From the NCBI GenBank assembly GCA_002269645.1, contig NIVC01000584.1, positions 62,001 through 126,000 on the forward strand: a stretch of DNA of 64,000 nt, written 5' to 3'. Each line of letters begins with the position of its first letter. Position 1 is the stretch's first letter. Positions 38,781-59,272 of the stretch are shown here, in pieces. The notes under the pieces were generated by a model, which was not told where the DNA came from, did no database searches, and was given only the letters and a program-made list of their open reading frames with translations. Source of the DNA: Macrostomum lignano (lineage: Eukaryota). A program made the translations under genes and the position numbers.

Positions 38781-39318
38781 TCACAATATACTAAATCTCT
38801 AAGATCTGTCTGACCGGTATTCTAGTCTACAGCCTGAATGCCTGAACTGATTTTTTTCAAACTTGCTTTATTCAATTGCAAATTATTGTGAGATTGTGTG
38901 GATATAATTGCATTGAAGAATTTGAATGGGAAGATGGTTAAATATTCAAAAACGAGTTTTCCCAATGCTTTCAATGGGAGGCAAGAAAAGGTCAACATCT
39001 TGACTAACTGAATAGCAATTCCAATTAAGATTGTGCCACAACTTTTCTCTGTTCACTGTGTACGCCCCAATACTGGCTGCAATAAGGGAGAGGAAAATAA
39101 TGCTCAGTGGCAGCGTGTGTACATTTTGCTCTGGCTGACTGCATAGACAATTGCTATTTATAGATTTCACTTAATTGTGCATTGGCTCTGCCTGCACACA
39201 ACCTGTGCACACTGAGCAGCCTATCACTGCTATGTATTTGACTGCAGTGCCGAAGCATATATGGCTGATTTTTGCATCCTCCTATCAGTAGGCGGAATAG
39301 CCGCAGTGTAGGCACTAG
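38781..39318 (+). mobile_element. Possible non-autonomous Helitron-like element (related 5' end also at ~48222)
   Basis: 5' TC..ATATACTAAA..CTGTCTG..CTGATTTTTTTCAAACTT. 3' hairpin GCGG-AATAG-CCGC followed by CTAG (39315-18). The base after CTAG is G, not the canonical T. Confidence 0.3.
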
Positions 39319-39589
39319 GACTAGGTTTAGGCTAGGCATAAGGTCCAAGGTTCGAGTCTGCCTCCTCGGTGGATGATTAAAATTAAATTAATTTATTCAT
39401 TTATATATAGCTTCGGGCTCAACTAATAGGAATATTTTTGTTGAATTTGTAAGGCACACCTAATGAATAATTTTTGCTAATTTACTAAGCAAATCTGATT
39501 TATAAAAAACTGCTTCGAGTATTACTCATTGCATCAATGGGTATTGCCTAGCTCCATGAAAGTATCAAATTGCTAAGCTGCTAATTTTT

Positions 39590-41400
39590 TTGTTAAAATG
39601 AAGGCTGAATTGTGAAAAAACTGCCAATATGTATGGAAAATTTATTAGTGAACCGTAATAAATGCTGAGAAAAAATTTAGATTCTTGAAAGGATCCTTTA
39701 TTTCAGTTTGCTGAGGATACTGAGGAGCTGGCTGAGAGGAGAACTGCAAACTGCTGAGGGGAACTACAGATTGGCGAAAGGGTCATTAATGCAGACTGCA
39801 AAGGGACAAACTGAAAACTGCTGAAAGGGGACACACTGAAAACTGCTGAGGTAGTTTCTCTTGACTTACAAGCCTATAGCTGAAAACTGCTGAGGTAGTT
39901 CCTCCCGACTTACAAGCCTATAGCTGAAAACTGCTGAGGTAGTTCCTCCCGACTTACAAGCCTATAGCTGAAACTGCTGAAGGGGGCTGCTTGGAGGATT
40001 CGTAGACTTCTGAGCAAGACAACTCTTAGAGAAGATAGGATAGCAAGACATCAGTTTCAAAACTGTACAGTTTAAATAATTAAGTTCAGGTTGTTTAGTG
40101 GATTACTGTGGATTGCTGAGTGGATTATTGTGGTTTGCTGACGGGATAGTTTTGGGCTGCTGAGGGGATAAATGCTTATGTTAATGAAAGTTATAGACTG
40201 CAATGGGATAACTCCAGGCTGCTAAGATAATGACTGCAGTCTATTTTGTGGGATTAGAACGGATAACTTCAGGTTGTTGTGGGCATATCTCAGGAATTGC
40301 TGAGATGTCATGGCTTTTTGGGGCAATTTCTGAGATTTCAAGGCCCATGGGAAATTGCTGATATTCCATGGCTTACTGGAAGAATTGCTTGAATTGAGGT
40401 TTCAAAGGCTTTTAAGGGGGAAGTGCTAAGATTGCTTTCTTGTGGGAGATGCTTGCTATTTAGGAATGAAGGTATTGCTTAATGCTGATTTGTGCAAAAC
40501 ACTGCGGATATGTATCGAAAATTGATTAGTGAACCGTACTAAATTGTTAGGAAATTTTTATTGTTGAAAATATCATTGCAATTTGCTAAGCAGGAAACTG
40601 AGGAGCCGGCCGACAGAAGAACTGCAGATTGTCAAAAGGATCATTGCAGACTGCAAAGGGGACAAACTGCAAACTGCTAAGATAGTTCATCCAGACATAT
40701 AGATCATATCCTCTCGAGGATTATATCATAGATGTAAAGATGTGGGATGTGCAGACGGAGTTCCTCCAGACCATATTCAGAAACAATGATATGATCTTTG
40801 CTCCAGACTTATGAGCATATAGCTGCAAACTGCTGAGATGGTAACTGTGGGCTACTGTGGACTACTGCTGAGTAAATATTGTTTGCTGTGGGGACAATTC
40901 TAGGCCGCTAGAGTATGACTGAAGTCTTTTTTGGGATTGGAAGGGATAATTTCAGGTGGAGACATCTCAGGAATTGCTGAGATGGCAAGGCTTATTAGTT
41001 GAATTGCTGAGATGTCATGGGTTTTTTGGGGTAATTTCTGAGATTTCAAGGCTCATGGGAATTGCTGAGATGTCAAGACTTACTGGGGTAATTGCTGAGA
41101 TGTCAAGGCTTCTTAGAGGAATTGCTGAGATGTCAAGGCTTACTGGGGGAATTGCTGAGATGTCGAGGCTTACTGAGGGAATTACTGACATTTCAAGGCT
41201 TACTCGGGGAATTGCTGAGATGTTAAAGCTTATTGGCCTGGGAGAATTGCATAGATGTCAAGGCTTACTCGGGAATTGCTGCGATGTTGATGCTTACTGA
41301 GGGAATTTCTGGGACGTCAAGGCCTACTGGGGGAATTGCTGAGATGTCAAGGCTCATGGGGATGGCTGAATTGTTGAGATATCAAGGCTCATGCGGAATG
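39590..41400. repeat. Diverged direct duplication (~0.7-0.9 kb) ending in a ~30-bp tandem array
   Basis: TAGTGAACCGTA at 39647 and 40527; GGATAAYTTCAGGT..TCTCAGGAATTGCTGAGATG at ~40261 and ~40944; GAATTGCTGAGATGTCAAGGCTT units at 41040-41400. Confidence 0.7.
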
Positions 41401-42315
41401 GCTGAATAGTTGGGGGGAGGTGGTTAGGTTGTTGAGCGATTGTCAGATCGTCAAGTAGTATGGCTTAAGTAGCTCATTTAATTCAGATAATAAAATAGTA
41501 CACATAAGTGATGCTGAATTTTGCTGATAGGAAATACCAGGGTATTTATTAAAAGTTTGATTCTTTGAGTTAGGCTAATAAAGAGGGGTGTCAAAGGCCG
41601 TCAGGGATTGGCATATTGAGCTCCTACTGTGGACCAGAATATGCCCAGGCCAATGACGATATGCTTTAAGAGTTTGTGCTTGAAAGGATAAGCACTATTT
41701 GCTGATTGAAAAAGGGTTTTGGGCTGATGAAGGAAACAATTTTTCTGGTGAAAGTTTTGACTCATGGCAATTTATTTTTTTTCAAAATGAGAAAAGGTAA
41801 TTTTTAATTAATGGAAATGGAAATTAATGGTTACTGTTGGCTTAAAATAAAAACCATTTGGTGTCATTTTAAAACCCCCCAGCGGGGGGCTAAATGGCTA
41901 GTCAATTGCTAAATGTCTTTTGCCAATATGATTATCGCCAGTTTGACTAGTAGCCATATAAACAAAAGTAACAGTGCAGCCTATTCTAGATTGTGAATAA
42001 ACTATGTATATGTGCTATAAATATATTGCATACTATGTATCAAAATTCAAGCATATATATGCTTCAAGACTTCAAATAAAAATTGGATATTCTTTTTTGA
42101 CTTACTATATCTTTAGCTTAATTATTTCTTTATGTCAATTTTTTTATAAGATACCTAAATCCTAATAGAAAATAATAATAATTGAAACAAACTGAGTTTA
42201 TTTTTGTGCAGTGTGTGTATGTACCTTAAATTTTAAAATTGCACCCTGAAATTGAAATGTAGGTACAGTTTAGGTGCGGTCTTATAACCTATTTTTTCTA
42301 TTAAAGCCTCATTTG

Positions 42316-42788
42316 GGCATAGTTCTAGTTTACTTTGCAATATTATTTTTATGTGTTTTTTTGCATTTACATAGCATATTCTGCATCTGTATCAAAACCA
42401 CAACCCTTTCAACTTAATCTATACAATGGCCGGCTGCCCAGCTGCCCTGACATTGACCATCCAATAGAGCTAGGTGGACCTGGTCGCACCTTGGTCTTTG
42501 CCAAGAGGCACCTGCGTGCAATGCACGATACAAGCGATGCACTCTTCAAGAGTCATCTTGATGAATATATCTGGCGCCGCCTGTACTCTAACAATGCATT
42601 CGGTGCCATGCTTTACTAGAATTCCATGTATTATTCTATTTAAATGACTTGGCAACTTCAACTGACTGTTTTTCTGACTTGTGACACTTGAGCCAAACCT
42701 GGAAAGTGACAAAAACAGGGTGAAATAATTTAGCGAAAGGCAGAATAATATCACGAAGTAGGCCCCTAAACTAGAACTATGCTATGCC
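42316..42788 (+). mobile_element. Internally deleted Merlin (IS1016/ISXO2-like) DNA transposon
   Basis: TIR GCATAGTTCTAGTTTA (42317-32 vs 42767-82), GG..CC termini, 8-bp TSD CTCATTTG/TTCATTTG. Peptide IELGGPG is fused directly to AKRHLRAMHDTSDALFKSHLDEYIWRR. Confidence 0.8.
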
Positions 42789-44003
42789 TTCATTTGCATT
42801 TGGCGATTTGCACTGCCTTAAAATAAGAAAAAAGAGAAATTGCACTTTGAGCCTTAAAATTGCACCATGAAAATGAGCATAGGGTGCAATTTTGCACCTT
42901 GTCTCTGGCAAAAAAGAAAACCCTGGAAACACTTTTGGCTAAGACTTTTGGCTGAGACTAAGAGCAGTCACATGAATATTATTCAATCCAATTGCGACTT
43001 ACAATATGTGTATGCTCTCAATTGAAATGGCTAGGTGAATCCCAAGGTTACAACCAAGCCAGCATGATTCCAAACTAAGCCTATCAATTCACATCACAAT
43101 CACAATTACCTAACAGAGGTGACAGAATAAAATCATCAGTTTAAATAGATTTAAAAGTCTGTGACTTCTAAAAAACACACTAGGGCCTAGTACAAAAGTT
43201 TTAATTATTTATTTCGAACAAACAATGCACTTCCGACACTGTCTAAACTATGCTATCTTTTTGAAGAAAGAATAAATTGACTTAAATTGAAATTCCAATG
43301 CAAAATTGCTTTGACCTAACGCAGAAGCAATTCGCTGGGATTTTGAGAAACGTAGGCCTACTAGAATTCTGCTCAGACTTATGATTAAAATAGTGTTACA
43401 AAGTTCTTAAAGTTGAACATTTTTTATTTTGTAGTTCTGGCTTTGAAAAGACGGAAACGAGCTTAGTACTAGCAGGTCAGGCAGCACCTAAGGTAGGTGT
43501 TAAGGTAAGGTTAAAAAATGAGTACTTTCAACAAATAAAAAATGTAGTGTCTGAATAAAATAAAAAAGTAGGTTTAAACAAATTTTTTACTTTAAAAGTA
43601 TTTCTAACGATTGATAGAAAAGAAGTAGCACTTAAAGTTTCTTTTTACAAAAAAAACAAAACAATGGGTTCTACTTTTTGTAGGTTTGTTTTCTAGCTTT
43701 GTTACAATTTGACAACAGACAACAATTCTGTGCTGTCTGTGACTTTTAATATAATGAATGATGAAGGTATGGAGTGGAGGATCGTTTCTGTTTTATTTGT
43801 GTTGTACTGCTAAGTTTATTAATTAATAATAAGCGCTCATGCTAAAATACATTAAGTCTGTTAAATTCGTAAGCCTATATTCCAGGCTAGGACCTAGGGC
43901 GAAGTCTTGTTTTGAAAGGATTTGATTTGAGTTAGATCTTTGTTTTGTTGTTTTGTTAAGAACTGTAGTAGTAGACCTAGGCCTACCCTATTATTTTGAT
44001 AAC

Positions 44004-47000
44004 ATGAAGATGGACTTTCTTCAGCTTATTCCATCTAGTACCTTGGATGTTTTATTACGTGTTCCTTTTCTTTTTATTATTGATAATACATTGAACACAG
44101 AACTCCCTTCTATCATTCGAACGCAACATGTTGAAGCTGTTCAGTCTGTTGATCGTTTATCTGGAAATGGCTCTAAGTTAAACAGAGAGCAATATAAGCT
44201 TTGCTTGCTTAAAGACATTGGCAAAGATACCCTATCATTGTTTGATAGATTCTTTGAGAATACTATAAACATAGATGATTGTCCACCTCAGTCATTAGTG
44301 TTCTTTTTAGTTATTATCATCCCTTTGTTTAGCTTTATATTCAAATCAGCTGGTAAGTCTTATTGACTTATTTTTATGTAGCTTAAATATAATATATTTA
44401 TTATTTAGCTAATATAATTAATCTGGCATTCCTTTGGTTTACAATCATTTTTCCACGTATATTTCGGTTCACGATCCCCATGTAATTTTCCATATAAATG
44501 ATTGTAGCTTGCTTGAAATAAGCAAAATTGTTAAACTAACTGAGCTTATATGTTACATATTAGAAAAACTAAACAGAATAGCCAACAAATGGTTACTTTC
44601 ATGGCATTGCAATGGCAATAACGAGGATCCTATATATCCACTTTAGTTTACGATCATTTAAATGGAAATAATACATGTAAATGATCATGAACCAAAGCTA
44701 GCCATGTATTGAGATAGCTAGTTGAGAGGATTAGTGCATGAATTTAATTTCCAAAAATGAATCCGAGAAGATGATCCTATATATGGCGAAATCCAAAAAC
44801 GTGGGATAAAACGGTAAAACAAATCTGCAGACATTCGATGGAAAGTAATGAAGACTTGTAGGCCTTAGAGAAGGCTAATTTTTTTACTACTTACAAAACA
44901 GAAAGTAATCTGTGTTTTACTTTTTATTCAAGTCAAAAAGATGAAGTATTTCTAAGGATTTCAAAGTTTTTCTAAAACCATATAAACTCGCAAAAATTCA
45001 TACATATATAAAGTGCAAAGTTTGCCAGCAAACATCTTTCTCTAAAAGTAAATATATCGCTAATTCCTTGTTGCAAAATAATCTTTAAGTTGTTTTCTTT
45101 CATTTAAATATTAACTTGCATAGTATTAGTATTTGTAATATGCCTATATTTAGACTTAAAAATTTTGGGTAAAAAATGGTACCACAAAATGTGAACCCGG
45201 CATCCAAATCAGATGCTTACTGTATGCTCATTAAGCAACGAAGAACAATGAAATTACACTAAAACATGTATCATTGCGGTGTATATGCAGGAAAAAAAGA
45301 ATTTTCCAAATTGCTTTAGTAGAAGCTGAGTAAAATGCAATTTTCCAATCCTTATGGGAATTCCAATGTGTTACCCGGCTTCCAAATCAGACGCTTACTG
45401 TATGCTCATTAAGCGACGAGGAACAATGAAATTACACTAAAACATGTATCATCGTGGCGTGTATGCAGGAAAAAAAGAATTTTCCAAATCGCTTTAGTAG
45501 AAGCTGAGTAAAATGCAATTTTCCAATCCTTATGGGAATTCCAATGTGTTACCCAACTTCCAAATCAGATGCTTACTGTATGCTCATTAAGCGACGAGGA
45601 ACAATGAAATTACACTAAAACATGTATCATCGTGGCGTGAATGCAGGAAAAAAAGAATTTTCCAAATCGCTTTAGTAGAAGCTGAATAAAATGCAAGTTT
45701 CTGATCCTTACGGAAATTTGTATGTTTAAATAATAAACTTACATTGAACACAACTTATTGCAAACGAACTCTAAAAAATACACGTTGTCAAGAGTAACGA
45801 AAGTGATAAACAAATAAACCCTTGATAATAATGTTAAATATGTTGTAGAATTATAGAGTGTAACATTATAAGATAGTTAAAGTTATTAAAATACATTATT
45901 ATAGCTTTTCTATCATTTTCATTAGACTCATTTTGGGTCGTAATTAAACTTACCGTTTTAACAAATCATTTTATTAAAAATAAAGCTATACAAAAATAAT
46001 TTGTGCTTTAATAGACTTTTTTACCTTTTAAAAACTTGAATAAATTAATTTTATAGCTTTATTGCTTTCAAATTGCCAAAAAACGAATTTTCATAAAACT
46101 TGCCCCCGATTTTTGGATTTCACCATATATATCCACTTCGGTTTACAATCATTTAAATGGGAGTAATACATGTAGATGATCTTGAACCAAAGCTAGCCAT
46201 GTATCGAGACAGTTATGATTTCAGTGCATGATTTCAATTTCCAAAAATGAATCCAAGAAGACGCGGGATCCTATATATCCACTTCGGTTTACGATCATTT
46301 AAATAGAAGCAATGCATATAAATGATTGTGAACCGAAGCTAGCCATGTATTGAGATAGCTACAAGCTTTATCTGAAATCAAGCCCTATCTCGATACATGG
46401 CTAGTTTCAGTTCACGATTATTTATATGCATTGCTTCCATTTAAATGATTGTGTACCGAAGCTGAGGGGGGTGTTGAAGACATGTATAGTCATAGTTATT
46501 AGTTCAACTGGTGGGACTTGTTGGCAATTAAAATGTCTTGAGTTAATGTGCACTGCTAAGTAACTTGACGCTTTATTATTCTCTTCAACATTTATTACAT
46601 TTAGATTAATAGAACAATTAGAACATTTAGATTACATTTAGATTTAGATTAAATTTTAGATTAAACATTTATTCTATGTTTAATTATTTCCAAAATTATT
46701 TTGCCCTCTATTCAAGGGTGGTGGGGGGTGGGGGTTGGAATTAAATGAACAATTTGAGAAGATAGCCAAATGTTCTTTTATCTATATAGCTAATATTAAA
46801 GCAAATTTATTTTATAAGTTTTTTAAAGTTTCTTGAAATAAAAAATGCTAAGAAGATCTGGTAATTTTATATTAAAGCTTATAATTGTTGATATAAAACT
46901 GCATTCAATTTAAATAAATTTGATATATAAACATTTGACTTTAAGAATGAATAAACATTGAATAAACATTTCTTAGAAAGCATGTTTAGATTTAGCATAG

Positions 47001-47588
47001 TAAAAATAGGAGCGAATATAGTCCACTTTGGCGACAAACAATTTAGGCAAAAACCATTTTGACAATAGCCATTTCAGCAACAGCGTAAGCAATAAATGAA
47101 AGCAAGGGCAGGAGGGGGGGCTGGTGGTTATTCTTAGCATGTACAGCTATAGTGGAGGGTGGGGAAGTCCGGCTGGCAAGAAGAAAAACTCTAGAGAGCC
47201 TGCTGGCTATATGCGCTGTCCTCAATTTACCTGCATCAAAGTTAAGATGGTTATTAAGTATAGTTTGGTGGGTACATGCAGCCAATGCATTCTATACACA
47301 AATTGTAGGAGGCTATAGATGATAATGGACTTTTCTAGGAACAGAAAAGAATGGGCAATGAGCATAAGGAGGACTAGATTTGTTTTTTTATTTCTTACTG
47401 CTTTGTTTTAGCTTTGTGATGACTTTGACTTTGACTTTACTTTTAAAATTAAAATAAATGCATTATTGATGCTGTTGCCAAAATGGCTGTTGCTGATTTA
47501 ACTTGTCACCAAAATGGTTGTTGCTGAAGTGGTTTGTTGCCAAAGTGGACTGATACCATGCCAATGGATAGGACAACCCTAAAAGAAG

Positions 47589-47624
<36 letters not shown>

Positions 47625-50600
47625 CTTTTTTTAATGTATATATACAAGCTGTTGAAACTTGTAGAATTTGAACCTGGGGAATTCTAATCCCCAGAACTAT
47701 TTTGCATGTATTCTAAAATCTAAAGTCATATTCACACAAAAACTTATTGATCGTTAGGATAGAAGGAAACATAAAATAGAGCTAAATTTGTATAAAATTA
47801 GGATTTAAGGCAACCATTGATATGGCTAGGGTGCTATGCAGAATGTCAGAAAATGTCTATTTGACTCTAAAACATATATTAGCAAACTTTGGCCTCTGCC
47901 TATCTCCAAGTCCCTTGGATCTTTGAAACTTCCATCTTCTCTTCTGTCTCCTCTTTTCTCTTTCTCTCCTCTCATTTCTTCTGTTCTTTCCTCTCTACTC
48001 TCCTCTTTTTTCTTGTCTCTTCCCTCATCTCTCTTTTCTCTCATCTTTGCTCTATCAAATCTCCTTTCTCTTCTTTTTTCTCTGCTCTCTTATCTCTTCT
48101 CACTTCTCTTTTCTTGCTTCTCTCTCATCTCTTTTATCTCATGTCTTCTTTTCTCTCTAAGTCAAAAAGTCATTCTCAAAGGTCTATATATCACATTTAT
48201 TTAAATTGAATGCAGTTTATATCCTATATACTAAAAATGAGTTGTCTGTATGTATGTGGGTAGGTAAGTATGCAATAGATTTCAGAAAAAATGGCTCAAC
48301 CGATTTTCTTCAAACTTGCACCATTCAATCAGAAATTTTCCTGGGACGGTACATGCATCCTGGTTAAGAAATTGCTCAATTTTAAAGGGATTAAATATTT
48401 GAAAAACATGCTTTTTGCAAAGGTCAAGCAGCTCTTTCGACCTGGAATGCATTGTAAGAATGCTAGAGAAAAAACTGACTGGCTTAAACATTGCATCACA
48501 ACAAGTTGAAAACAGTGCCAAAGAAAAGCACACAAGACTTGATTGTAATTGCATAACCATATTGCTAACTTAAATTGAGACTGATACTGGCTGACTGAGA
48601 AATTGATTATGTCATAACTTTCTACTCCAATTGACTTGCTGTAAGAATTAAATTATAATGGCCACAATTCATGTTCTCCAAATGAAAAGAGATAGCCCAG
48701 ATGCGAACAGACTGGAATGCTATTATAGTGACCTGGGTTTGAATCTTAGTAGTGCAAAAAGATTTTTTTATTAAAACACCTTAAAAACACAAAACTGCTA
48801 AACATAAAAGAAGCACAATGTCAAACATAGAAAAGCCACCATGTCAAACATTAAAGAGCCACCATGCCAAACATAAAATAAGCACTATGTCAAACATATA
48901 CGTGACTCCATGTCAATGATTAAAAGCCACCATGTCGAACATAGAAGAGCCACTATGTCAAACCTAAACAAGACACCACATCTAACATTTAAGAGCCACC
49001 ATGTCAAACATAAAGAGCCACCATATCAAACATTTAAGAGCCACCATGTCAAACATTTAAGAGCCACCAAGTCAAACATTTAAGAGCCACCATGCCAAAT
49101 ATTTAAGAGCCACCATGTCAAACATATATGTGACTTTATGTCAAACTTTAAAGAGCCACCATTTCGAACATTAAATAGCCACTTTGTCAAACATTAGAGA
49201 ACCGCCGTGTCAAACATAAAAGAGCCACCAGGTTAAACATTAAAGAGACACCATGTAAAACATTAAAGAGCCACCGTGTCAAACATAGAAGAGCCACCAT
49301 GTCAAACATAAAAGAGCCACCATGTCAGACATTAAAAAGCCACCGTATCAAACATAAAAGAGTTACCATGTAGAACAAAAAACAGCCACCATGTCAAACA
49401 TAGAAGAGCCACCATGTAGAATAATAAATAGCCACCATGAAGAACATTAAAGAGCCACCATATCAAACATTTAAGAGCCACCATGCCAGACATTAAAAAG
49501 CCACCGTATCAAACATAAAAGAGTTACCATGTAGAACATTAAAGAGCCACCATTTCAAACAGTAAAGAGCCACCACGTCAAACATAAAAGAGCCACCATG
49601 TAGAATATTAAAGAGCCACCATGAAGAACATTAAAGAGCCACCATGTCAAACATTTAAGAGCCACCATGTCAAACATTTAAGAGCCACCATCTCAAACAT
49701 ATATGTGACTTTATGTCAAACTTTAAAGAGCCACTATTTTGAACATTAAATAGCCACTTTGTCAAACATTAGAGAGCCGCCGTGTCAAACATAAAAGAGC
49801 TACCAGGTTAAACATTAAAGAGCCACCATGTCAAACATAGAAGAGCCACCATGTCAAACATAAAAGAGCCATCATGTCAAACATTTAAGAGCCACCAAGT
49901 CAAACTTTTAAGAGCCACCATGTCAAACATATATGTGACTTTATGTCAAACTTTAAAGAGCCACTATTTCAAACATTAAATAGCCACTTTGTCAAACATT
50001 AGAGAGCCGCCATGTCAAACATAAAAGAGCCACCAGGTTAAACATTAAAGAGCCACCATGTCAAACAATAAAGAGCCACCATGTAAAACATATATGTGAC
50101 TTTATGTCAAACTTTAAAAAGCCACTATTTCGAACATTAAATAGCCACTTTGTCGAACATTAAAGAGCCACCGTGTCAAACATAAAGAACCACCATGTTA
50201 AACATAGAAGAGCCACCATGTTAGACATTAAAAAGCCACCGTATCAAACATAAAAGAGTTACCATGTAGAACAAAAAACAGCCACCATGTCGAACATTAA
50301 AGAGCCACAATGTAGAATATTAAAGAGCCACCATGAAGAACATTAAAGAGCCACAGTGTCAAACATAAAAGAGCCACCATGTCAAACATATAAGAGCCAC
50401 CATGTCAAACATTTAAGAGCCACCATGTCAGACATTAAAAAGCCACCGTATCAAACATAAAAGAGTTACCATGTAGAACATTAAAGAGCCACCATTTCAA
50501 ACAGTAAAAAGCCACCATGTCAAACATAAAAGAGCCACCATGTCAAACATTAAAGAGCCACCATGAAGAACATTAAAGAGCCACCATGTCAAACATTAAA

Positions 50601-53600
50601 AAGCCACCATGTCAAACATTTAAGAGCCACCATCTCAAACATATATGTGACTGTTTGTCAAACTTTAAAGAGCCACTATTTCGAACATTAAATAGCCACT
50701 TTGTCAAACATTAGAGAGCCGCTGTGTCAAACATAAAAGAGCCACCAGGTTAAACATTAAAGAGCCACCATGTCAAACATAGAAGAGCCACCATGTAAAA
50801 CATAAAAGAGCCACCATGTCAGACATTAAAAGCCACCGTGTCAAACATAAAAGGGCCACCAGGTTAAACATTAATGAGCCACCATGTCAAACAATAAAGA
50901 GCCACCATGTTGAACATAAAAGAGCTACCATGTCAAACATTTAAGAGCTACCATGTCAAACATTTAAGAGCTACCATGTCAAACATTTAAGAGCTACCAT
51001 GTCAAACATAAAAGAGCCACCATGTCAAACATAAAAGAGTGACCATGTCAAACAATTAAAAGCCACTTTGTCTAACATTAAAGAGCCACCATTTCAATCA
51101 TAAAAGAGCCACCATGTCAAACATAAAAGAGCCACCATGTCAAACAATAAAAAGCCACTTTGTCTAACATTAAAGAGCCACCATGTCAAACATTAAAAAG
51201 CCACCATGTCAAACATAAAAGAGCCATCATATCAAACATTAAAGAGCCACTTTGTCTAACATAAAAGAGCCACCATGTCAAACATAAAAAAGCCACCATT
51301 TCAAACATTAAAAAGCCACCATGTCAAACATAAAAGAGCCACCATGTCAAACATAAAAGAGCCACCATGTCAAACATAGAAGAGCCACCATGTCAGATAT
51401 TGAAAAGCCACTGTATCAAACATAAAAGAGCCACCATGTCAACATAAATGAGCCACCATGTCAACATAAAAGAGCCACCATGTCAAACAATAAAGAGCCA
51501 CCATGTCAAACATAAAAGATACACAATTTCAAACGTAAAAGTAAGCGAATTTTAAAGGAGCCACTATAATGCTAAGGAAATTGTCGCACTAGCTATTTAT
51601 TGTCTGGTGGATGCTTGCTATTTGGGGATGCTATCTATCTGGGGGATGCTTGCTATCTGGGGGATGCTTGCTATCTGGGGGAAGCTTGCTATCTTGGGGA
51701 TGCTTGCTATCTGGGGGATGCTTACTATCTGGGGTCTGGGGGAATGCTTGCTATCTGGGGGATGCTTGCTATCTGGGGGATGCTTGCGATCTGGGAGATG
51801 CTTGCTATCTAGGGGATGCTTGCTATCTGGGGGATGCTTGCTATCTGGGGGATGCTTGCTATCCGGGGGATGCTTGCAATCTGGGGGATGCTTGCTATCT
51901 GGGGGATGCTTGCTGTCTTGGGATGATTTCTTTTTGCATTGCACTTCATTTAAGTATTTTGTCTTTTTTCTTTGTGATTGTGAATGCTTTATTTGGCTAT
52001 CTTTTTGTTACTTGTAGAGAGCAGAGATTCTATACAAATATTCTATAATGGGGGGCGAAGATTGCTAGTATATTGACTAATACCATGACATTATTTTGGA
52101 ATAATTAATAATATATATAATTGTTTTTTTCAATATTGCCAATTTCGACTACATTGTACCCTAAAGAAGCTATACATAGATAGCCATTTAATAGCAACAA
52201 AGATAAATATGAGTTTAAAGACCTATATAAATACTTTGTAGATCCAAATAAATATTAAGATTTAAGAAAAAATTTATAAGATAACAAATGAAAAGTAGCA
52301 TTGTCCTACTAAGAAGGGTCATTAGCTATACTTATACAGGCTGACTTTGCCTTGTCTTTTTGTTGAATATTTTACTTTTTTATGTTTATAACAAACTGGA
52401 TTAGTGGCATAAAGTAGGGAAGGCAAGAGGCCAATATATGCAAGGCTAGGCAAGAGGCCAGGAATGCAAAGACCATATATAAATACTGCATATAAGTGGA
52501 GTGAGAGCAGAAGGGGAGAGGCTAGGTGGGGCTAAGCCATGCAAGACTGTAGGGGGCAAAACAGCCATAGAGAAAGAAAGGGGAAGGCTTGCCAATTAAA
52601 GGCATTTGCAGCAAGAGACCTGATTAGATTAGTCCAAAAAGAAAGAAACAAAAAAGATGCTAGTCAATGAAAATGAAAACAAAAAAAATATCTTTGTTAT
52701 TTGAGTCTATAACCCAAGATATTTAAAAAGATTCCCTTTTAAAGTGGCAATATTTATTTTTAGTGATCTATCTTTCTGCCCTTATCCATGAAATAAAGGG
52801 CTCCAATGGTCTTTAAGTCTTAGTTATTAAGTAGATGACAATGATTGAGTACATTGCACTATGGCAATTAAAATAAGTGTTTGAATATATGCCATTAGGG
52901 TCCACTCTTTAGAAACTTAGTTCTAGTTCTCTCAAAAAAACTGAGCTTATTCTTATCCAAGCTTTAAAAATAGGCACTCAGTTTGAGTGAGTTTATCATT
53001 TGCAAAAACTTATAGACTTAGTCAATCGTCCATCAGGCTGCTATTGTCACAAATGCCTAGGTGTATAGACTTTTCCATTTTGCTGATATTAGTTGCCCAC
53101 CTATCTACTTACTATTTTATCTTGCTGATATCATGGGCTTATGGTTGCCATGAGCAATGCAAAGTTGACTAGGTGGATATTTGCCACTTTGTTTCATAGA
53201 GCTTCAAAGTTTATAAAGTTACACCTCAGTCCTTCAGTGAACTGCACCCCTCCAGCCCTTCAGTGAACTGCACCCCTCCAGCCCTTCAGTGAACTGCACC
53301 CCTCCAGCTCTTCAGTGAACTGCACCCAACAGTCCTTCAGTAAACTGCACCCCTCCAGCCCCTCAGTGAACTGCACCCCTCCAGCCCTTCAGTGAACTGC
53401 ACCCCTCCAGCTCTTCAGTGAACTGCACCCAACAGTCCTTCAGTAAACTGCACCCCTCCAGCCCTTCAGTAAACTGCACCCCTCCAGCCCTTCAGTGAAC
53501 TGCACCCCTCCAGCCCTTCAGTGAACTGCACCCCTCCAGCCCTTCAGTGAACTGCACCCCTCCAGCTCTTCAGTGAACTGCACCCAACAGTCCTTCAGTA

Positions 53601-56600
53601 AACTGCACCCCTCCAGCCCTTCAGTGAACTGCACCCCTCCAATCCTTCAGTGAACTGCACCCAACAGTCCTTCAGTAAACTGCACCCCTCCAGCCCTTCA
53701 GTGAACTGCACCCCTCCAATCCTTCAGTGAACTGCACCCCTTTAGTCCTTCAGTGAACTGCACCCCTCCAGCTCTTCAGTGAACTGCACCCAACAGTCCT
53801 TCAGTAAACTGCACCCCTCCAGCCCTTCAGTGAACTGCACCCCTCCAATCCTTCAGTGAACTGCACCCCTTTAGTCCTTCAGTGAACTGCACCCCTTCAC
53901 TGTAGCAAGCTTATTTAACCTTTGTGACCCAAAATTCTACAGCTTGATGTTAATATTAAAAGGTCTTTAATCCTGAATCCTCACACAGTGATCGCTCTGG
54001 CCGGCTTAGCATCCGTCCTGGACTCGGATTATCTCCGGGCTGCGTGCGCCAATCTCGTGTCTGTGCTCATGGCTTATTATTCCTATCGTAGCAGCTGTGA
54101 GCTGGTTCGGGCGGCCGGTGCGGCGGCCTTGCTGAGCTCGCCCGATCCGCCTGGCGACAGGCACAGCGGTGGCGGAACCCTCGGCCTGGTGCTGTACTGC
54201 AACAGTCAGCTGCTCACCGCACTGCTGCTCTCCCGCTGCCTGCTTGCCGACTTGCCCAACCGACTGCAGCGGCTACTTCGAGTAGTCATGTTCGCCTTTC
54301 TGCAGCTGCCGCTCATATTCACCTGTGTGGGCGCTCCCGACCCCCTGCTGAGCCGCAGCCCCATGCTGTCTGTGTGCCCAGCTGCCTGCCTCATCAATGC
54401 CCAATTGTTGGGCAACGCTGACCGGCTGGTTGGCCAGAGTGTGCGAGCTGTGCGAAATCTGTGCAGGCAGGCTCGCGCTCTGGGCCTTGAGGTTTGTTGC
54501 TGAGCGGCTGCAGTGCCGCGTTTGTTGGGTTCGGGAAAGGTTCAGCAAGAGTCGATTTGTGTAGCTTTATTTGTCTGTCTGTCTGTCTTAATTTCTTAAT
54601 GTCTGTCCCTGTCTGTCGGTCGGTAAATCTGTGTCTGTTTGTTTGTCTGTCTTTCTGTTTGTCCATCTGTCTGACTGTCTGTTTGTCCGTCTGTTTGTTT
54701 GTCCATCTGTCTGTCTGTCAGTCTCTTTGTCCATCTGTCTGTTAGTCTGTTTGTCCATCTGTCTGTCTGTATGTCCGTGTCTGTTTACTTGATGTCTGTC
54801 TTCTGTCTGTCTATGTAGTCTTTCTGTCTCCTACGAGGAACTCGAAATCCCGAGACCCGAGTCGATATTTGAGATTGAGACCATTACTCGTATTTGCACC
54901 TGTCGAGTTGTTATTTGTTTGTTTGACTGTCCGTGTAGCGTAGGCCCGTGTTCGCATCCGGGTCAGTGGAATGGCCATGGTTGATTGTGAATTCGCTAAT
55001 TGCAGATAAAAATAATATTTGCATCGAATATTTTGCGTAGACCTACTTATTAGTAAGTAGTCTGTATCGTTTCTGACGCTTTTCATTTGATTTTGTCTGT
55101 CCAACAGGGCGTCATCGAGCAGCACTGGGCCCGGCTGCGAGTTCCTCTGCTGCTTCGCGTATTCTGGCTATTGAAAGCCGCCTATTACCTGGTTACTATG
55201 CTGTTGCTACCCGCTGAGGCTGGCGGCGGCGAGTCTCCGACTTTGATTGGCGCCCTGCAGGCGGCCACGCTGGGCCGCGGCTCGGAGAACCTGCTGTCCC
55301 TGCTGGGCATGACGGCCGTCATCAGCTGGCTGTCGCAGCTCATTGTGCTCTGCTTCGCCAAGTTTATCAGCCTTCACGACTACGAGGAGTGGCAGTACGG
55401 CACCGTGTCGGCCATGCTGTTCTTCCTGCTGGCTCTGCAGGCTGGCATCACCGGCTTGCCGGCCGACGACAGAGTGAGCCGGCTGTACCGCAATCTGTGC
55501 CTGATGGTGTCCGCTCTGTTGCACTTTGTGCACAATATGTGCCAGCAGGTCTGTGTCCGTGCCTTGTTCTGTGTGCTTTCCGAATGCTTTTAATCAGTAG
55601 GAGCCAAATTGGAAGGCTTGGGGATTATGTTGAAATAGTGGGGTGTTAACTTAGATTGCATTAGGTGCTAAAATAGAATGCATTAGTGCCAAATTAGAAT
55701 GTATTAGGTGCCAAATAAAAAAGCATTAGATGCCAATTAAGAATATATTAGGTGCCAAATTAGAATGCATTAGGTGCCAAATAAGAATATATTAGGTGCC
55801 AAATTAGAATGCATTAGGTGCTAAATTAGTATGCATTAAGTGCTAAATTAGAAAAACCCATTAGGTACCAAATAAGAATATATTAGGTGCTAAATTAGAA
55901 TGCATTAGGTGCTAAATTAGAATGCATTAGGTGCTAAATTAGAAAAACCCATTAGGTAACAAATTAGGTGCCAAATAAAAAGCATTAGATGCCAAATAAG
56001 AATATATTAGGCGCTAAATCAAAATGCATTACGGGCCAAATAAGAATTCATTAGGTGCCAACTTAGAATGCATTAGGGGCCAACTTAGAATGCATTACGT
56101 GCCAACTTAGAATGCATTAGGGGCCAAATAAGAATGCATTAGTTGCCAACTTAGAATGCATTAGGTGCCAACTTAGAATGCATTAGGGGCCAAATAAGAA
56201 TGCATTAGGTGCCAACTTAGAATGCATTAGGTGCCAACTTAGAATGCATTAGGGGCCAAATAAGAATTCATTAGGTGCCAACTTAGAATGCATTAGGGGC
56301 CAAATAAGAATGCATTAGGTGCCAACTTAGAATGCATTAGGTGCCAACTTAGAATGTATTAGGTGCCAAATAAAAAAGCATTAGATGCCAAATAAGAATA
56401 TACGAGTATTAGGCGCTAAATCAAAATGCATTAGGGGCCAAATAAGAATGCATTAGGTGCCAACTTATAATGCATTAGGGGCCAAATAAGAATGCATTAG
56501 CTGCCAACTTAGAATGCATTAGGTGCCAACTTAAAATGCATTAGGTGCCAACTTAGAATGCATTAGGTGCCAACTTAGAATGCATTAGGGGCCAACTTAG

Positions 56601-58698
56601 AATGCATTACGTGCCAACTTAGAATGCATTAGGGGCCAAATAAGAATGCATTAGTTGCCAACTTAGAATGCATTAGGTGCCAACTTAGAATGCATTAGGT
56701 GCCAACTTAGAATGCATTAGGGGCCAAATAAGAATGCATTAGGTGCCAACTTAGAATGCATTAGGTGCCAACTTAGAATGCATTAGGGGCCAAATAAGAA
56801 TTCATTAGGTGCCAACTTAGAATGCATTAGGGGCCAAATAAGAATGCATTAGGTGCCAACTTAGAATGCATTAGGTGCCAACTTAGAATGCATTAGGGGC
56901 CAAATAAGAATTCATTAGGTGCCAACTTAGAATGCATTAGGGGCCAAATACGAGCTAAGAATGCATTAGGTGCCAACTTGGAATGCATTAGGTGCCAACT
57001 TAGAATGCATTAGGTGCCAACTTAGAATGTATTAGGTGCCAAATAAAAAAGCATTAGATGCCAAATAAGAATATACGAGTATTAGGCGCTAAATCAAAAT
57101 GCATTAGGGGCCAAATAAGAATGCATTAGGTGCCAACTTATAATGCATTAGGGGCCAAATAAGAATACATTAGGGGCCAAATAAGAATGCATTAGTTGCC
57201 AACTTAGAATGCATTAGGTGCCAACTTAGAATGCATTAGGTGCCAACTTAGAATGCATTAGGGGCCAAATAAGAATGCATTAGGTGCCAACTTAGAATGC
57301 ATTAGGGGCCAAATAAGAATTCATTAGGTGCCAACTTAGAATGCATTAGGTGCCAACTTAGAATGCATTAGGTGCCAACTTAGAATGCATTAGGTGCCAA
57401 CTTATAATGCATTAGGGGCCAAATAAGAATGCATTAGGTGCCAACTTAGAATGCATTAGGTGCCAACTTATAATGCATTAGGGGCCAAATAAGAATGCAT
57501 TAGGTGCCAACTTAGAATGCATTAGGTGCCAACTTAGAATGCATTAGGTGCCAACTTAGAATGCATTAGGGGCCAAATAAGAATGCATTAGGTGCCAACT
57601 TAGAATGCATTAGGTGCCAACTTAGAATGCATTAGGTGCCAACTTAGAATGCATTAGGTGCCAACTTATAATGCATTAGGGGCCAAATAAGAATGCATTA
57701 GGTGCCAACTTAGAATGCATTAGGTGCCAACTTATAATGCATTAGGGGCCAAATAAGAATGCATTAGGTGCCAACTTAGATAAATGCATTGTTAGGTGCC
57801 AAATTAATATAAAGGCATTATGTGCTAAATTAGATGAATGCATTAGGTGCCAAATTGAAAAAATGCATTAAGAGCCAATCCTCGAGTGTAAAGTTATATA
57901 AGTAAATATACGAGAACCCCCGGTTTTACCACAATCGCCAACCCCAGGTGATGCAGCGAGTCGCCTCAGCCCCCGCCGGTGTCCCGCTCAGCGTGCACCT
58001 TCGCGTCCTCTCCCTGTGCCTGTTCCTCCTGCTGAGTCCCATGGCCTTCCTGTACGTGCTGTGGACCAGCTACGAGGCGGGGGCCTGGATCCTCGCCGTC
58101 ACCGCCTTCTCCGTGGAGGTGCTGTTCAAAGTGCTCTTCACCCTCCTGCTGTACGCCGCATCCATGCTGGAGGCCTGGCGGGAGGGCACCTTCGAGGATT
58201 TGGACGAGACTCTGTACTACATCCGCGGCGCCAGCAATGTCGTGGAGTTCGTGTTCGGCATCTTCCTGTTCTTCAACGGCGGCTACATCTTCATATTCGA
58301 GTCTGGAGGCATTATCCGCGGCGTGATGCTGCTCATTCACGCCTACTTCAATATTTGGCAGCAGGCCGCTAATGGCTTGCAGGTGAGGCTTGGCTGGTAG
58401 CTGAGGACACGGATGTTCTACTGACGGAAATTCCAGAATTGCTGGCAGTGTTTTAGCTGCTTTTAAATTCAACGTTAGAAGTATAGTGTTGAACAGCATT
58501 ATGTAAACAGACAAACAGACACCGACAGAGCCATATTCACACCAACATAGACGGACAACAGGCAATAAAACAGGCATTTTTAGATTTAGAGGCTGACAGA
58601 CAGAAAAACAGACTAACAGACCGACAGACAGATAGAAAGAAGGCACTAAGACAGACAGACAGACAGACAAACAAACAAAGAGACACAGTCAGACAGAC

Positions 58699-58757
<59 letters not shown>

Positions 58758-58790
58758 AAGAGACACAGACAGACAGACAAACAAAGAGAC

Positions 58791-58829
<39 letters not shown>

Positions 58830-58836
58830 AAGAGAC

Positions 58837-58897
<61 letters not shown>

Positions 58898-59272
58898 TAC
58901 AGATAGACAGATACAGTCAGACAGACAGACAGACACAGTCAGACAGACAAGCACAGACACACAGACAGATACAGATAGACAGACAGACAGACACAGTCAG
59001 ACAGACAGACAGACAGCTGTCCCTGCCCTCTCCGGTGTCCGCAGGCGCTCCGAAACCGGTGGCTGTCGCTGGCCCGGCTGCACAGCTTGTCCCCGGCCAG
59101 CGAGGAGCTGCTGCAGTCCATGGGCGACGTGTGCGCCATCTGCTACAGCGACCTGCAGCACCGTGACTGCCGGGTGACGCCCTGCCGCCATGTGTTCCAC
59201 TCCGCCTGCATTCGCCGCTGGATCGCCGTCAGCATGGACTGTCCGATGTGCCACCAGGCCATGTTCACCTGA
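44004..59272 (+). CDS. RNF139: RNF139/TRC8-like multi-pass ER membrane RING-H2 E3 ubiquitin ligase, ~651 aa; join(44004-44352,53989-54491,55108-55548,57948-58382,59045-59272)
   Basis: N-terminal [61 protein letters not shown], and RING-H2 [26 protein letters not shown]. Phases 1,0,0,0 are all consistent. Linkage of exon 1 is less certain than exons 2-5. Confidence 0.88.
44785..46124. mobile_element. GG..CC-ended non-autonomous DNA element nested in an older ~140-bp repeat
   Basis: GGCGAAATCCAAAAA vs TTTTTGGATTTCACC, inserted in the TATATAT run of the host unit GATCCTATATATCCACTT; the TSD is ambiguous in the TA run. Confidence 0.65.
45188..45715. repeat. 177-178-bp tandem repeat x3
   Basis: AATGTG..CCAAATCAGAYGC unit starts at 45188, 45365 and 45543. 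Confidence 0.9.
47019..47552. mobile_element. MITE with YAGTCCACTTTGGCRACAAAC TIRs and apparent 3-bp ATA TSD
   Basis: Inverted match between 47019-47040 and 47531-47552; ATA on both sides. Confidence 0.6.
47900..48160. repeat. CT-rich polypyrimidine low-complexity tract
   Basis: Direct reading. Confidence 0.8.
48790..51535. repeat. ~22-bp minisatellite (AAAGAGCCACCATGTCAAACAT), >100 copies, RNF139 intron 1
   Basis: Direct reading. Confidence 0.95.
51600..51920. repeat. 18-bp minisatellite (GGGGATGCTTGCTATCTG)
   Basis: Direct reading. Confidence 0.9.
53228..53898. repeat. 25-bp minisatellite (CCTTCAGTGAACTGCACCCCTCCAG) just before RNF139 exon 2
   Basis: Direct reading. Confidence 0.93.
55660..57870. 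repeat. 22-bp minisatellite (TTAGAATGCATTAGGTGCCAAC), RNF139 intron 3
   Basis: Direct reading. Confidence 0.95.
58505..59015. repeat. (CAGA)n microsatellite, RNF139 intron 4
   Basis: Direct reading. Confidence 0.93.

What the first reader, a model, noticed from the sequence alone, without database searches (positions are those of the whole stretch)
44004..54491. One gene, two genomes' worth of composition: AT-rich RNF139 exon 1 joined to GC-rich exons
Exon 1 encodes the TRC8 N-terminal hallmark and splices in the right phase (G|GTAAGT to CACAG|TG) over a 9.6-kb TE- and satellite-laden intron. It is ~30% GC with A/T-ending codons (44041-44100: 17/60 GC), while exons 2-5 are ~60-65% GC. An intact ORF under such different mutational pressure implies a sharp, long-lived mutational or chromatin domain boundary inside a gene. 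Alternatives are exon capture from another copy or an assembly chimera. Gene predictors would likely miss this exon.
Basis: partly seen in the sequence, partly recalled or inferred. Interest (0 to 1): 0.7.

Follow-up and report, generated by a model that had tools for sequence, protein, structure and literature searches.

The report
AT-rich first exon of flatworm TRC8
The AT-rich stretch is the genuine, already annotated first coding exon of the TRC8/RNF139-type ubiquitin ligase gene of the flatworm Macrostomum lignano; it sits in a repeat-rich, AT-decaying DNA domain while the gene's other exons are GC-rich, which is a real but modest curiosity about how base composition evolves.

Summary
The window is Macrostomum lignano contig NIVC01000584.1 (window position + 62000). 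Exon coordinates, splice sites, phase and composition are all as described: GC3 is 0.30 in exon 1 and 0.72-0.91 in exons 2-5, z = -13.6 against the gene's own codon usage.

The exon is real and ancestral. It carries the only TRC8 N-terminal motif in the window. It is the longest perfectly conserved stretch among three paralogous copies. Its intron has the same phase, and lies within two codons, as in the Lingula and Ixodes orthologues. The RNA-derived GenBank proteins (PAA55552, PAA80387, PAA80362) already include it, so predictors did not miss it. Assembly chimera and exon capture are rejected.

Substitutions among the three copies show different regimes on the two sides. Noncoding DNA around exon 1 is AT-biased (equilibrium GC 0.23) with about 3.5-fold CpG hypermutability. 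Noncoding DNA around exons 2-5 is balanced (0.43), with none.

Background explains only about 0.1 of the 0.5 GC3 gap. The rest implies a position-dependent GC fixation bias, probably biased gene conversion, that barely acts on exon 1. This is one locus, with no methylation or recombination data.

Incidentally, the GenBank models omit a conserved 145-codon exon 4.

The parts
44004..44352 (+). Exon 1 of the M. lignano TRC8 homologue Mlig030976. It encodes aa 1-116 plus the first base of codon 117, including the N-terminal TRC8 motif [18 protein letters not shown] and the first half of TM1. GC 0.335, GC3 0.30, CpG o/e 0.41.
   Evidence: It is identical to the start of GenBank PAA55552/PAA80387/PAA80362. 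Only 1 synonymous change occurs among the three copies, against 3-4% divergence in the 2 kb upstream.
44353..53988 (+). Intron 1 (9636 nt, phase 1, GTAAGT...CACAG). Unique sequence has GC 0.32 and CpG o/e 0.27. It holds four tandem arrays.
   Evidence: The intron is 4.2-4.6 kb in the other two copies.
44425..46776 (.). Insertion specific to this copy (absent from L001 and L003). It contains a 178-nt x 3 repeat and 77-nt inverted repeats.
48160..52068 (.). Insertion specific to this copy, mostly a 23-nt satellite (about 119 copies, 48800-51541) plus an 18-nt array.
53227..53896 (.). 26-nt satellite (26 copies, GC about 0.55) just upstream of exon 2. It marks the AT-to-GC transition. The switch in the relationship among the three copies lies at or just after its 3' end.
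53989..54491 (+). Exon 2 (503 nt, GC 0.63, GC3 0.72).
55108..55548 (+). Exon 3 (441 nt, GC3 0.82).
57948..58382 (+). Exon 4 (435 nt = 145 codons, GC3 0.87). It encodes conserved TM helices of the TRC8_N domain. The GenBank and UniRef models omit it, and paralogue g3 has lost it by deletion.
59045..59272 (+). Exon 5 (RING-H2 finger and stop codon, GC3 0.91).
   Evidence: The annotated gene range L002 10001-25269 corresponds to window 44004-59272.
35098..53226 (.). AT-rich, CpG-depleted, repeat-rich domain (GC 0.23-0.41 per kb; unique sequence 0.32-0.35). It comprises the 8.9-kb intergenic spacer to a divergently oriented GC-rich gene (ATG at 35097, minus strand), exon 1 and most of intron 1.
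   Evidence: Substitution spectrum.

Best explanation
The interval 44004-44352 is the genuine, ancestral first coding exon of the M. lignano TRC8/RNF139-type gene. TRC8 is an ER-membrane RING-H2 ubiquitin ligase.

The exon is a 349-nt island inside an 18-kb repeat-rich domain. That domain is made of the intergenic spacer plus a long first intron, and its DNA evolves under a different regime from the rest of the gene:
- substitution is AT-biased, heading towards about 23% GC;
- CpG sites are hypermutable, the signature expected of germline cytosine methylation of repeat-rich DNA. M. lignano is reported to have DNMT1 and DNMT3.

In this domain the force that drives synonymous sites of M. lignano genes to about 80% GC hardly operates. 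Exon 1's synonymous sites, and in part its amino-acid choices, have therefore drifted to the local background. Purifying selection has kept the protein.

All exons are on one mRNA. The missing force is therefore position-dependent and acts at the DNA level. The most likely candidate is GC-biased gene conversion linked to recombination or exchange between copies, rather than translational codon selection.

Shown: the exon's reality, ancestry and conservation; the composition step; the difference in substitution spectra. Inferred: methylation, and biased gene conversion as the GC-driving force.
For: Reality and ancestry of the exon:
- Pfam TRC8_N aligns from aa 13 through the exon junction to aa 574. 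Exon 1 alone hits profile positions 3-29 at E = 0.003.
- It is the only such motif in six frames of the 64 kb.
- V16, R19, P21 and D27 are invariant against five homologues.
- The RNA-seq-derived GenBank proteins and a separate UniRef model use exactly this exon and junction.
- Three copies on different contigs share the arrangement.
- The longest perfect match in 4.5 kb of AT-rich alignment is 43981-44354, which is the exon.
- Across all exons, 10 of the 11 differences between copies are synonymous.
- Lingula and Ixodes TRC8 have a phase-1 intron within two codons of this one, in TM1.

Domain difference:
- Unique noncoding GC is 0.32-0.35 on the AT side and 0.39-0.45 on the GC side.
- CpG o/e is 0.27 in the AT block, 0.41 in exon 1 and 0.76-0.85 in exons 2-5.
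- AT side, polarised three-copy substitutions: S>W 65 of 894 sites and W>S 40 of 1827, giving equilibrium GC 0.23.
- AT side, CpG effect: CpG S>W 10 of 44 against non-CpG 55 of 850, P = 7e-4.
- GC side: S>W 15 of 747 and W>S 16 of 1066, giving equilibrium GC 0.43; CpG 3 of 139 against non-CpG 12 of 608.
- The GC side departs from the AT-side ratios at P = 0.0097 for AT bias and P = 0.046 for the CpG share.

Position-dependent fixation bias (my arithmetic):
- GC3 of 0.82 on the GC side needs a scaled bias of about 1.8.
- The same bias on the AT-side mutation spectrum would give GC3 of about 0.64.
- The observed 0.30 needs a bias of only about 0.4.

Exchange between copies is real here. The relationship among the three copies switches at about 53.9-54.0 kb.

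Literature:
- M. lignano CDS is 58.7% GC against 45.9% for the genome, with GC-ending codons preferred (PMC6739440).
- DNMT1 and DNMT3 are present, with low 5mC (PMC11292947).
Against: - This is one locus. No genome-wide distribution of per-exon GC3 was available, so I cannot say how unusual the case is in M. lignano.
- In the neighbouring HEATR1 gene, exon GC3 already ranges from 0.55 to 0.92.
- The GC-side substitution sample is small (31 polarised S/W changes), and the P values are 0.01-0.05.
- The three copies have different genealogies on the two sides. Absolute rates therefore cannot be compared, only ratios.
- No methylation or recombination data were examined. CpG depletion can have other causes.
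- Synonymous differences in the GC-rich exons run 8 S>W to 1 W>S. This does not show ongoing GC enrichment.
- The tick orthologue also has a lower GC3 in exon 1 (0.55 against 0.81). This could point to a gene-specific 5' effect rather than a local domain effect.
Confidence: 0.6

Rival explanations
1. Selection at the nucleotide level on the 5' coding region keeps exon 1 AT-rich independently of its surroundings. Candidates are weak mRNA structure or slow codons near the start and the first membrane-insertion segment, or regulatory elements embedded in the exon.
For: - Exon 1 is almost invariant among the copies, including at synonymous sites: 1 change in 349 nt.
- The Ixodes orthologue, in a different phylum, also shows exon-1 GC3 of 0.55 against 0.81 in exon 2.
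- The 230 nt upstream are also well conserved.
Against: - Exon-1 GC3 (0.30) equals the local noncoding GC (0.32-0.35). This is what neutrality predicts, not a special optimum.
- The low GC is uniform over all 116 codons, not only the first 30.
- First and second codon positions and the amino-acid composition are shifted too: FYMINK 33% against 18%.
- The synonymous conservation is not significant. About 4 changes are expected and 1 is seen (my arithmetic).
- Lingula shows no step.
- The first exons of the two neighbouring genes are GC-rich.
Confidence: 0.15
2. Exon 1 is used only by a minor isoform. Most transcripts would start at the exon-2 acceptor by spliced-leader trans-splicing and translate from Met144. 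Exon 1 would then be under relaxed constraint and decaying. This does not exclude the main explanation.
For: - 38.8% of M. lignano genes are trans-spliced (PMC5730564).
- Exon 2 has a strong acceptor and an in-frame Met 27 codons in.
Against: - Exon 1 is the most conserved element of the AT block, with no amino-acid change in three copies.
- The annotated transcripts contain it.
- A protein starting at Met144 would lack the conserved family N-terminus and TM1.
Confidence: 0.1
3. Exon capture or chimeric origin: the AT-rich exon was recruited recently from another gene copy, a transposon cargo or a foreign genome.
For: - The composition differs from the rest of the gene as much as between two genomes.
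- Residues 35-100 have no detectable homologue.
Against: - The phase-1 intron in TM1 is shared, within two codons, with Lingula and Ixodes. The alignment runs through the junction.
- The window holds no other exon encoding the N-terminal motif that this one could have replaced.
- An exhaustive search of 1.84 billion representatives finds no donor-like paralogue.
- The exon is present in all three copies, which are 2-4% diverged.
Confidence: 0.04
4. Assembly chimera: the AT block and the GC-rich exons are not contiguous in the animal.
For: - The boundary lies in a satellite array, a typical place for misjoins.
- The relationship among the three copies switches there.
Against: - Three contigs (NIVC01000584, 586 and 2737) independently place the exon 4.2-9.6 kb upstream of exon 2, with collinear flanks.
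- A separate UniRef gene model (A0A1I8HRH6), distinct from the GenBank models, and the RNA-derived GenBank models all join the two exons.
- At most, a switch between copies within the satellite is possible. That would not change the gene structure.
Confidence: 0.02

Closest known systems
RNF139/TRC8 and RNF145 (metazoan ER-membrane RING-H2 ubiquitin ligases; Pfam PF13705 TRC8_N plus RING-H2)
   Same: - Full-length TRC8_N domain (E = 5e-100) followed by a C-terminal RING-H2 finger.
- The N-terminal L-R-V-P-x-L-F-x-x-D motif.
- 42-43% identity to Lingula and Ixodes 'protein TRC8 homolog' over the conserved part.
- A short first coding exon ending in TM1 at a phase-1 intron, as in Lingula and Ixodes.
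   Different: - Three extra introns in the M. lignano gene.
- An insert of about 65 residues after the motif, with no homologue.
- Three paralogous copies, one of which lacks exon 4.
- Ligase activity and substrates were not tested.
Isochore-like compositional domains and their boundaries (vertebrate isochores; the isochore-like structure reported for Schistosoma mansoni, cited in PMC6739440)
   Same: - Neighbouring DNA domains of different GC content.
- Synonymous sites on the AT side follow the local noncoding composition.
   Different: - The scale is kilobases, not hundreds of kilobases.
- The boundary falls inside one transcription unit.
- The noncoding step is small (about 0.10), while the GC3 step is 0.52. 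The GC-rich exons stand far above their own introns.
GC-biased gene conversion as driver of GC3 heterogeneity (established in mammals, birds, honeybee and grasses)
   Same: - A position-dependent fixation bias towards GC that is independent of expression level is what the one-mRNA, two-compositions pattern calls for.
- Exchange between copies is evident at the boundary.
   Different: - Recombination and conversion bias were not measured here.
- Where 5'-3' gradients are known, for example in grasses, the 5' end is usually the GC-rich one.
Mosaic invertebrate DNA methylation with CpG decay of methylated sequence
   Same: - CpG o/e of 0.27 in the AT block.
- A 3.5- to 4-fold excess of CpG transitions there, and none on the GC side.
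- M. lignano is reported to keep DNMT1 and DNMT3.
   Different: - In most invertebrates the methylated, CpG-poor compartment is the body of housekeeping genes.
- Here the CpG-poor compartment is the repeat-rich spacer, the first intron and exon 1. Exons 2-5 are CpG-replete.
- Methylation itself was not observed.

Membership tests
TRC8/RNF139-RNF145 family | TRC8_N multi-pass membrane domain (Pfam PF13705) above the curated threshold | tested here: met
   336 bits against a cut-off of 27, E = 5e-100. Residues 13-574 align to profile positions 3-493 of 494.
TRC8/RNF139-RNF145 family | C-terminal RING-H2 finger (C-x2-C ... C-x-H-x2-H-x2-C ... C-x2-C) | tested here: met
   zf-RING_2 hit at E = 8e-10, residues 605-645. 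The pattern CAIC...CRHVFHSAC...CPMC can be read in the sequence.
TRC8/RNF139-RNF145 family | Conserved N-terminal motif (V/L-x-x-R-V/I-P-x-L/V-F-x-x-D) at the very start of the protein | tested here: met
   It is encoded by exon 1. V16, R19, P21 and D27 are invariant in the alignment with five homologues. Exon 1 alone hits profile positions 3-29 at E = 0.003, which is below the threshold on its own. tblastn with the Lingula N-terminus hits only 44043-44117 in the window.
TRC8/RNF139-RNF145 family | Orthologous gene structure: phase-1 intron within the first transmembrane segment | tested here: met
   M. lignano splits at ..FKSA|VIALAG, Lingula at ..AIVA|VFIGAA and Ixodes at ..LYLQ|AFLGAL. All three are phase 1. 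The Lingula and Ixodes introns fall in the same alignment column, and the M. lignano intron is two codons away.
TRC8/RNF139-RNF145 family | E3 ubiquitin-ligase activity at the ER membrane | not testable with these tools
   This needs biochemistry.
Compositional (isochore-like) domain boundary | Different noncoding GC on the two sides, outside repeats | tested here: met
   Unique noncoding GC is 0.32-0.35 on one side and 0.39-0.45 on the other.
Compositional (isochore-like) domain boundary | Different substitution spectrum (equilibrium GC) on the two sides | tested here: met
   Equilibrium GC is 0.23 on the AT side and 0.43 on the GC side. The depth-normalised test gives P = 0.0097, from only 31 polarised events on the GC side.
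Compositional (isochore-like) domain boundary | Exon GC3 explained by the regional background alone | tested here: not met
   GC3 of exons 2-5 is 0.72-0.91 while their unique introns are at 0.43-0.45. Only exon 1 sits at its background.
Germline-methylated DNA domain | CpG depletion and excess CpG transitions | tested here: met
   CpG o/e is 0.27. CpG S>W is 10 of 44 against non-CpG 55 of 850, P = 7e-4. The GC side shows 3 of 139 against 12 of 608.
Germline-methylated DNA domain | 5-methylcytosine actually present on this DNA | not testable with these tools
   No methylome data were accessible. The Wasik et al. 2015 paper is not held in the library.

The most novel reading that the evidence does not exclude
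The M. lignano genome may be partitioned at kilobase scale into two kinds of compartment.
- One is methylated, AT-decaying and repeat-rich.
- The other is unmethylated and exchange-active, and there biased gene conversion drives exons to about 80% GC3.

The boundaries would be sharp enough to cut through single genes. The strong GC-ending codon preference reported for this species would then be mainly a DNA-level by-product, not translational selection. Genes such as this TRC8 would be natural within-mRNA controls that prove it.

The milder step at the same intron in the tick orthologue would suggest that first exons isolated by long repeat-filled introns generally escape the GC drive.
Probability: 0.25. 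Interest if true: 0.55.

Novelty: new member of a known kind. Interest (0 to 1): 0.35.

Why it matters
The gene and its first exon are already in GenBank, so nothing is added to the gene catalogue except a corrected 651-aa model that includes exon 4.

The value lies in a natural control. One mRNA has one expression level, yet its first exon has synonymous sites at the noncoding background (GC3 0.30) and the rest are at 0.82. This argues that the marked GC-ending codon bias of M. lignano is largely a position-dependent DNA-level process rather than translational selection. A published analysis attributed that bias to mutation plus selection (PMC6739440).

The locus also links the AT compartment to a methylation-like CpG decay signature, in a flatworm reported to retain DNMT1 and DNMT3. 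If a genome-wide scan finds many such split genes, M. lignano would be a convenient model for fine-scale compositional domains. Practically, it warns that composition-trained gene finders and codon-optimisation tables for M. lignano transgenes do not describe all real exons.

Tried and rejected
- Orthologues from other Macrostomum species.
  - The full-length word-index search found only M. lignano and distant animals.
  - The same search with aa 1-284 returned nothing, not even the query's own protein, so I treat it as a tool limitation.
  - The exhaustive phmmer search with aa 1-284 found only P0001.
  - The age of the AT state across species therefore could not be tested.
- A larger background of M. 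lignano exons through the neighbouring HEATR1 gene. The search returned only two contig-less UniRef fragments. Only 5 HEATR1 exons could be mapped, from P0008.
- Literature. No paper mentions Mlig030976. The trans-splicing paper has no held supplements. Wasik et al. 2015 is not held. The M. cliftonense/M. hystrix genome paper says nothing on GC content.
- A splice or trans-splice acceptor at 43979-43980 (AG), suggested by the start of the perfect-match run. Rejected because copy L001 has AC there.
- Transposon protein domains in open frames of the AT block. No Pfam hit reached significance.
- RNA genes. There is no Rfam family or tRNA in the window.
- My first comparison of absolute S>W rates between the two sides (P about 1e-6). 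I withdrew it as evidence after finding that the three copies have different genealogies on the two sides. Only depth-normalised ratio tests are used.

Full report
**Identity of the window.**
The 651-aa protein assembled from the five exons finds Macrostomum lignano 'hypothetical protein BOX15_Mlig030976g3' at 99% identity. The next hits are 'protein TRC8 homolog' of Lingula anatina and Ixodes scapularis at 42-43%. The locus fetched for the g1/g2 protein, L002 (GCA_002269645.1, contig NIVC01000584.1), is base-for-base identical to the window over 29,997 nt. The window is therefore NIVC01000584.1:62,001-126,000 of the Mlig_3_7 assembly.

- The ATG is at 44004, the donor is CTG|GTAAGT after 44352 (349 nt, phase 1), and the acceptor is CACAG|TG before 53989. 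Further exons lie at 55108-55548, 57948-58382 and 59045-59272.
- Pfam gives TRC8_N over residues 13-574 (E = 5e-100) and a RING-H2 finger at 605-645.
- GC3 is 0.30 in exon 1 and 0.72, 0.82, 0.87 and 0.91 in exons 2-5.
- Recoding the exon-1 peptide with the codon usage of exons 2-5 gives GC3 0.78 +/- 0.035, so the observed value is 13.6 SD lower. Leu CTG is used 0 of 18 times against 58 of 98.
- First and second codon positions are shifted too. FYMINK residues make up 33% against 18%, and GARP residues 14% against 28%.
- M. lignano coding sequence averages 58.7% GC and the genome 45.9% (PMC6739440). Exon 1, at 33.5%, is therefore an outlier for this species.
- Ten other exons nearby have GC3 of 0.55-0.92. 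These are TRC8 exons 2-5, five HEATR1 exons and the first exon of the upstream gene.

**The exon is real.**
- It carries the only TRC8 N-terminal motif in six frames of the window. V16, R19, P21 and D27 are invariant against five homologues, and the alignment runs through the junction inside TM1.
- Its 146-codon open frame (43926-44363) is the only long open frame in DNA below 35% GC that is not low-complexity. At this composition about 7.5% of codons would be stops. By my arithmetic, such a frame is expected about 0.04 times in the AT-rich part.
- The three paralogous copies are L001 (g3), L002 (the window) and L003, on three contigs. All have the exon 4.2-9.6 kb upstream of exon 2, with collinear flanks.
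- Across the copies exon 1 shows one change, which is synonymous, while the 2 kb upstream differ by 3.2-4.4%.
- The longest perfect match in a 4.5-kb alignment of the AT-rich region is 43981-44354, which is the exon.
- Over all exons, 10 of 11 differences between copies are synonymous.
- GenBank proteins PAA55552, PAA80387 and PAA80362 begin with exactly this exon and use this junction. That annotation was built from RNA-seq and a de novo transcriptome, using StringTie, TACO and TBONE (PMC5730564).
- A separate UniRef model, A0A1I8HRH6, does the same. From memory, I believe it derives from the earlier ML2 assembly.
- The prediction that gene finders would miss the exon is therefore not borne out, and the transcript-based refutation criterion is not met.

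**The exon is ancestral, not captured.**
- Lingula TRC8 has two coding exons, split by a phase-1 intron in a Val codon (..AIVA|VFIGAAML).
- Ixodes TRC8 likewise has a phase-1 intron (..LLYLQ|AFLGALV), 9.6 kb long.
- In the protein alignment the Lingula and Ixodes introns share a column, and the M. lignano intron (..FKSA|VIALAGL, phase 1) lies two codons away in an ungapped hydrophobic stretch.
- No donor-like paralogue exists among 1.84 billion representative proteins.

**What surrounds the exon.**
- An AT-rich block runs from 35.1 kb to about 53.2 kb. At its 5' edge a divergently oriented gene with a GC-rich first exon starts at 35097 on the minus strand.
- Outside tandem arrays the block is 0.32-0.35 GC. 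The unique parts of introns 2-4 are 0.43-0.45, and the 3' UTR/intergenic DNA is 0.385.
- CpG o/e is 0.27-0.28 in the block, 0.41 in exon 1 and 0.76-0.85 in exons 2-5.
- Intron 1 holds four satellites.
- This copy also has two insertions that the other copies lack, at 44425-46776 and 48160-52068.
- No transposon protein domain was detectable.

**Substitution regimes.**
I aligned unique noncoding DNA of the three copies and took the singleton state as derived.
- *AT block* (2721 sites under stringent filters):
  - S>W is 65 of 894 and W>S is 40 of 1827. The equilibrium GC is 0.23, below the present 0.33.
  - CpG sites change S>W at 10 of 44 against 55 of 850 for other C/G (P = 7e-4).
  - The looser filter gave 20 of 62 against 98 of 1244, with all 20 CpG changes being transitions.
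- *GC side* (1813 sites). This covers TRC8 intron 2, the 3' region and the HEATR1 introns.
  - S>W is 15 of 747 and W>S is 16 of 1066. The equilibrium GC is 0.43, against 0.41 now.
  - CpG is 3 of 139 against 12 of 608.
- *Genealogy caveat*. On the AT side L002 is the outlier, and on the GC side L001 is. Absolute rates are therefore not comparable, and I discard my first Fisher tests.
- *Depth-normalised tests*. The GC side still departs from the AT-side ratios at P = 0.0097 for S>W against W>S, and at P = 0.046 for the CpG share.

This supports a real difference in mutational or chromatin regime across intron 1. M. lignano is reported to retain DNMT1 and DNMT3, with low 5mC (PMC11292947). Methylation of the repeat-rich block is thus a plausible cause of the CpG signature, but I did not observe it.

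**Why background alone is not enough.**
The noncoding step is about 0.10 GC and the GC3 step is 0.52. I applied the usual mutation-bias times fixation-bias relation to the ratios (my arithmetic).
- GC3 of 0.82 on the GC side requires a scaled GC-favouring bias of about 1.8.
- The same bias on the AT-side spectrum would give GC3 of about 0.64.
- The observed 0.30 needs a bias of about 0.4.

All exons share one mRNA, so translational selection should act equally on all of them. A position-dependent DNA-level force, most plausibly GC-biased gene conversion, fits better.

Exchange between copies does occur here. L003 resembles L001 upstream and L002 downstream. The switch lies at about 53.9-54.0 kb, at the end of the 26-nt satellite and the start of exon 2. 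An assembly switch within the satellite cannot be excluded.

Two caveats apply.
- The few synonymous differences in the GC-rich exons run 8 S>W to 1 W>S. This is what mutation would produce before any fixation bias, and it does not demonstrate ongoing GC enrichment.
- The numbers are small throughout.

**Comparative hint.**
The Ixodes orthologue, which also has a 9.6-kb first intron, shows exon-1 GC3 of 0.55 against 0.81 in exon 2. Lingula, with a 295-nt intron in an AT-rich gene, shows 0.40 against 0.37. This fits either 'first exons isolated by long introns escape the GC drive' or a gene-specific 5' constraint. I keep the latter as the main rival.

**Verdict.**
The finding is a correct reading of a real gene. 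The exon and its junction are already in the public annotation. The chimera and capture alternatives are rejected. The domain-boundary interpretation is supported in part, and is sharpened: an AT-biased, CpG-hypermutable block in which the GC fixation bias is nearly absent. It is a single-locus curiosity of moderate interest unless a genome-wide scan shows it to be general.

Noticed in passing
window 57948-58382 (exon 4); L001 16530-17801: The GenBank proteins (506 aa) and the UniRef fusion model all skip exon 4. This exon is 145 codons, stays in frame when skipped, and encodes conserved TM helices of TRC8_N. It is intact and 100% identical in L002 and L003, whereas paralogue g3 (L001) has a deletion of about 500 nt (window 57879-58377) that removes it. 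The canonical product of this copy is probably 651 aa, and the 506-aa models for g1/g2 may have been projected from g3 transcripts.
   Followed up: partly
window 53870-54110, against L001 and L003: The relationship among the three copies switches here. Upstream, L001 and L003 group together (L002 carries 90 of 146 singletons). Downstream, L002 and L003 group together (L001 carries 17 of 22). The cause is either recombination or gene conversion between copies, or an assembly switch, at the 26-nt satellite/exon-2 border. That border coincides with the AT/GC boundary.
   Followed up: partly
L005 (Ixodes scapularis JADPSH020000010.1) 501-11914: The tick TRC8 orthologue has the same two-part layout, with a 9.6-kb first intron and a milder composition step. 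Exon-1 GC3 is 0.55 and exon-2 GC3 is 0.81.
   Followed up: partly
window 59240-60870; protein P0008: UniRef model A0A1I8HRH6 fuses TRC8 to the downstream HEATR1 gene (ATG at 60860). It splices out of the RING finger to just upstream of that ATG. This is either a read-through or polycistronic precursor of the kind described for M. lignano, or a model artefact.
   Followed up: no
window 54572-54829, 58595-59016, 60405-60750, 4860-5490, 13800-14350: (GACA)n/(TGTC)n microsatellites recur in introns and spacers on both strands, flanking the GC-rich exons. Several other satellites fill most noncoding DNA, including a 22-nt array of about 100 copies at 55648-57856, a 32-nt array at 59601-59958 and a roughly 44-nt G-rich array from 61.9 to 64 kb.
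   Followed up: no
window 46896-48218: A 1.3-kb segment is bounded by 43-nt inverted repeats (93% complementary), like a non-autonomous DNA transposon. It is shared with the other two copies.
   Followed up: no
window 34372-35097 (minus strand): A divergently oriented neighbour gene has its GC-rich first exon (GC3 0.73, Ala/Ser-rich, no Pfam hit) ending exactly at the 5' edge of the AT block. Being next to the block does not make a first exon AT-rich; being inside it does.
   Followed up: partly
tool behaviour: The word-index protein search with aa 1-284 returned no hit at E <= 10, although an identical database protein (P0001) exists. The candidate list was probably swamped by low-complexity words. 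Negative results from that tool should be read with care.
   Followed up: no
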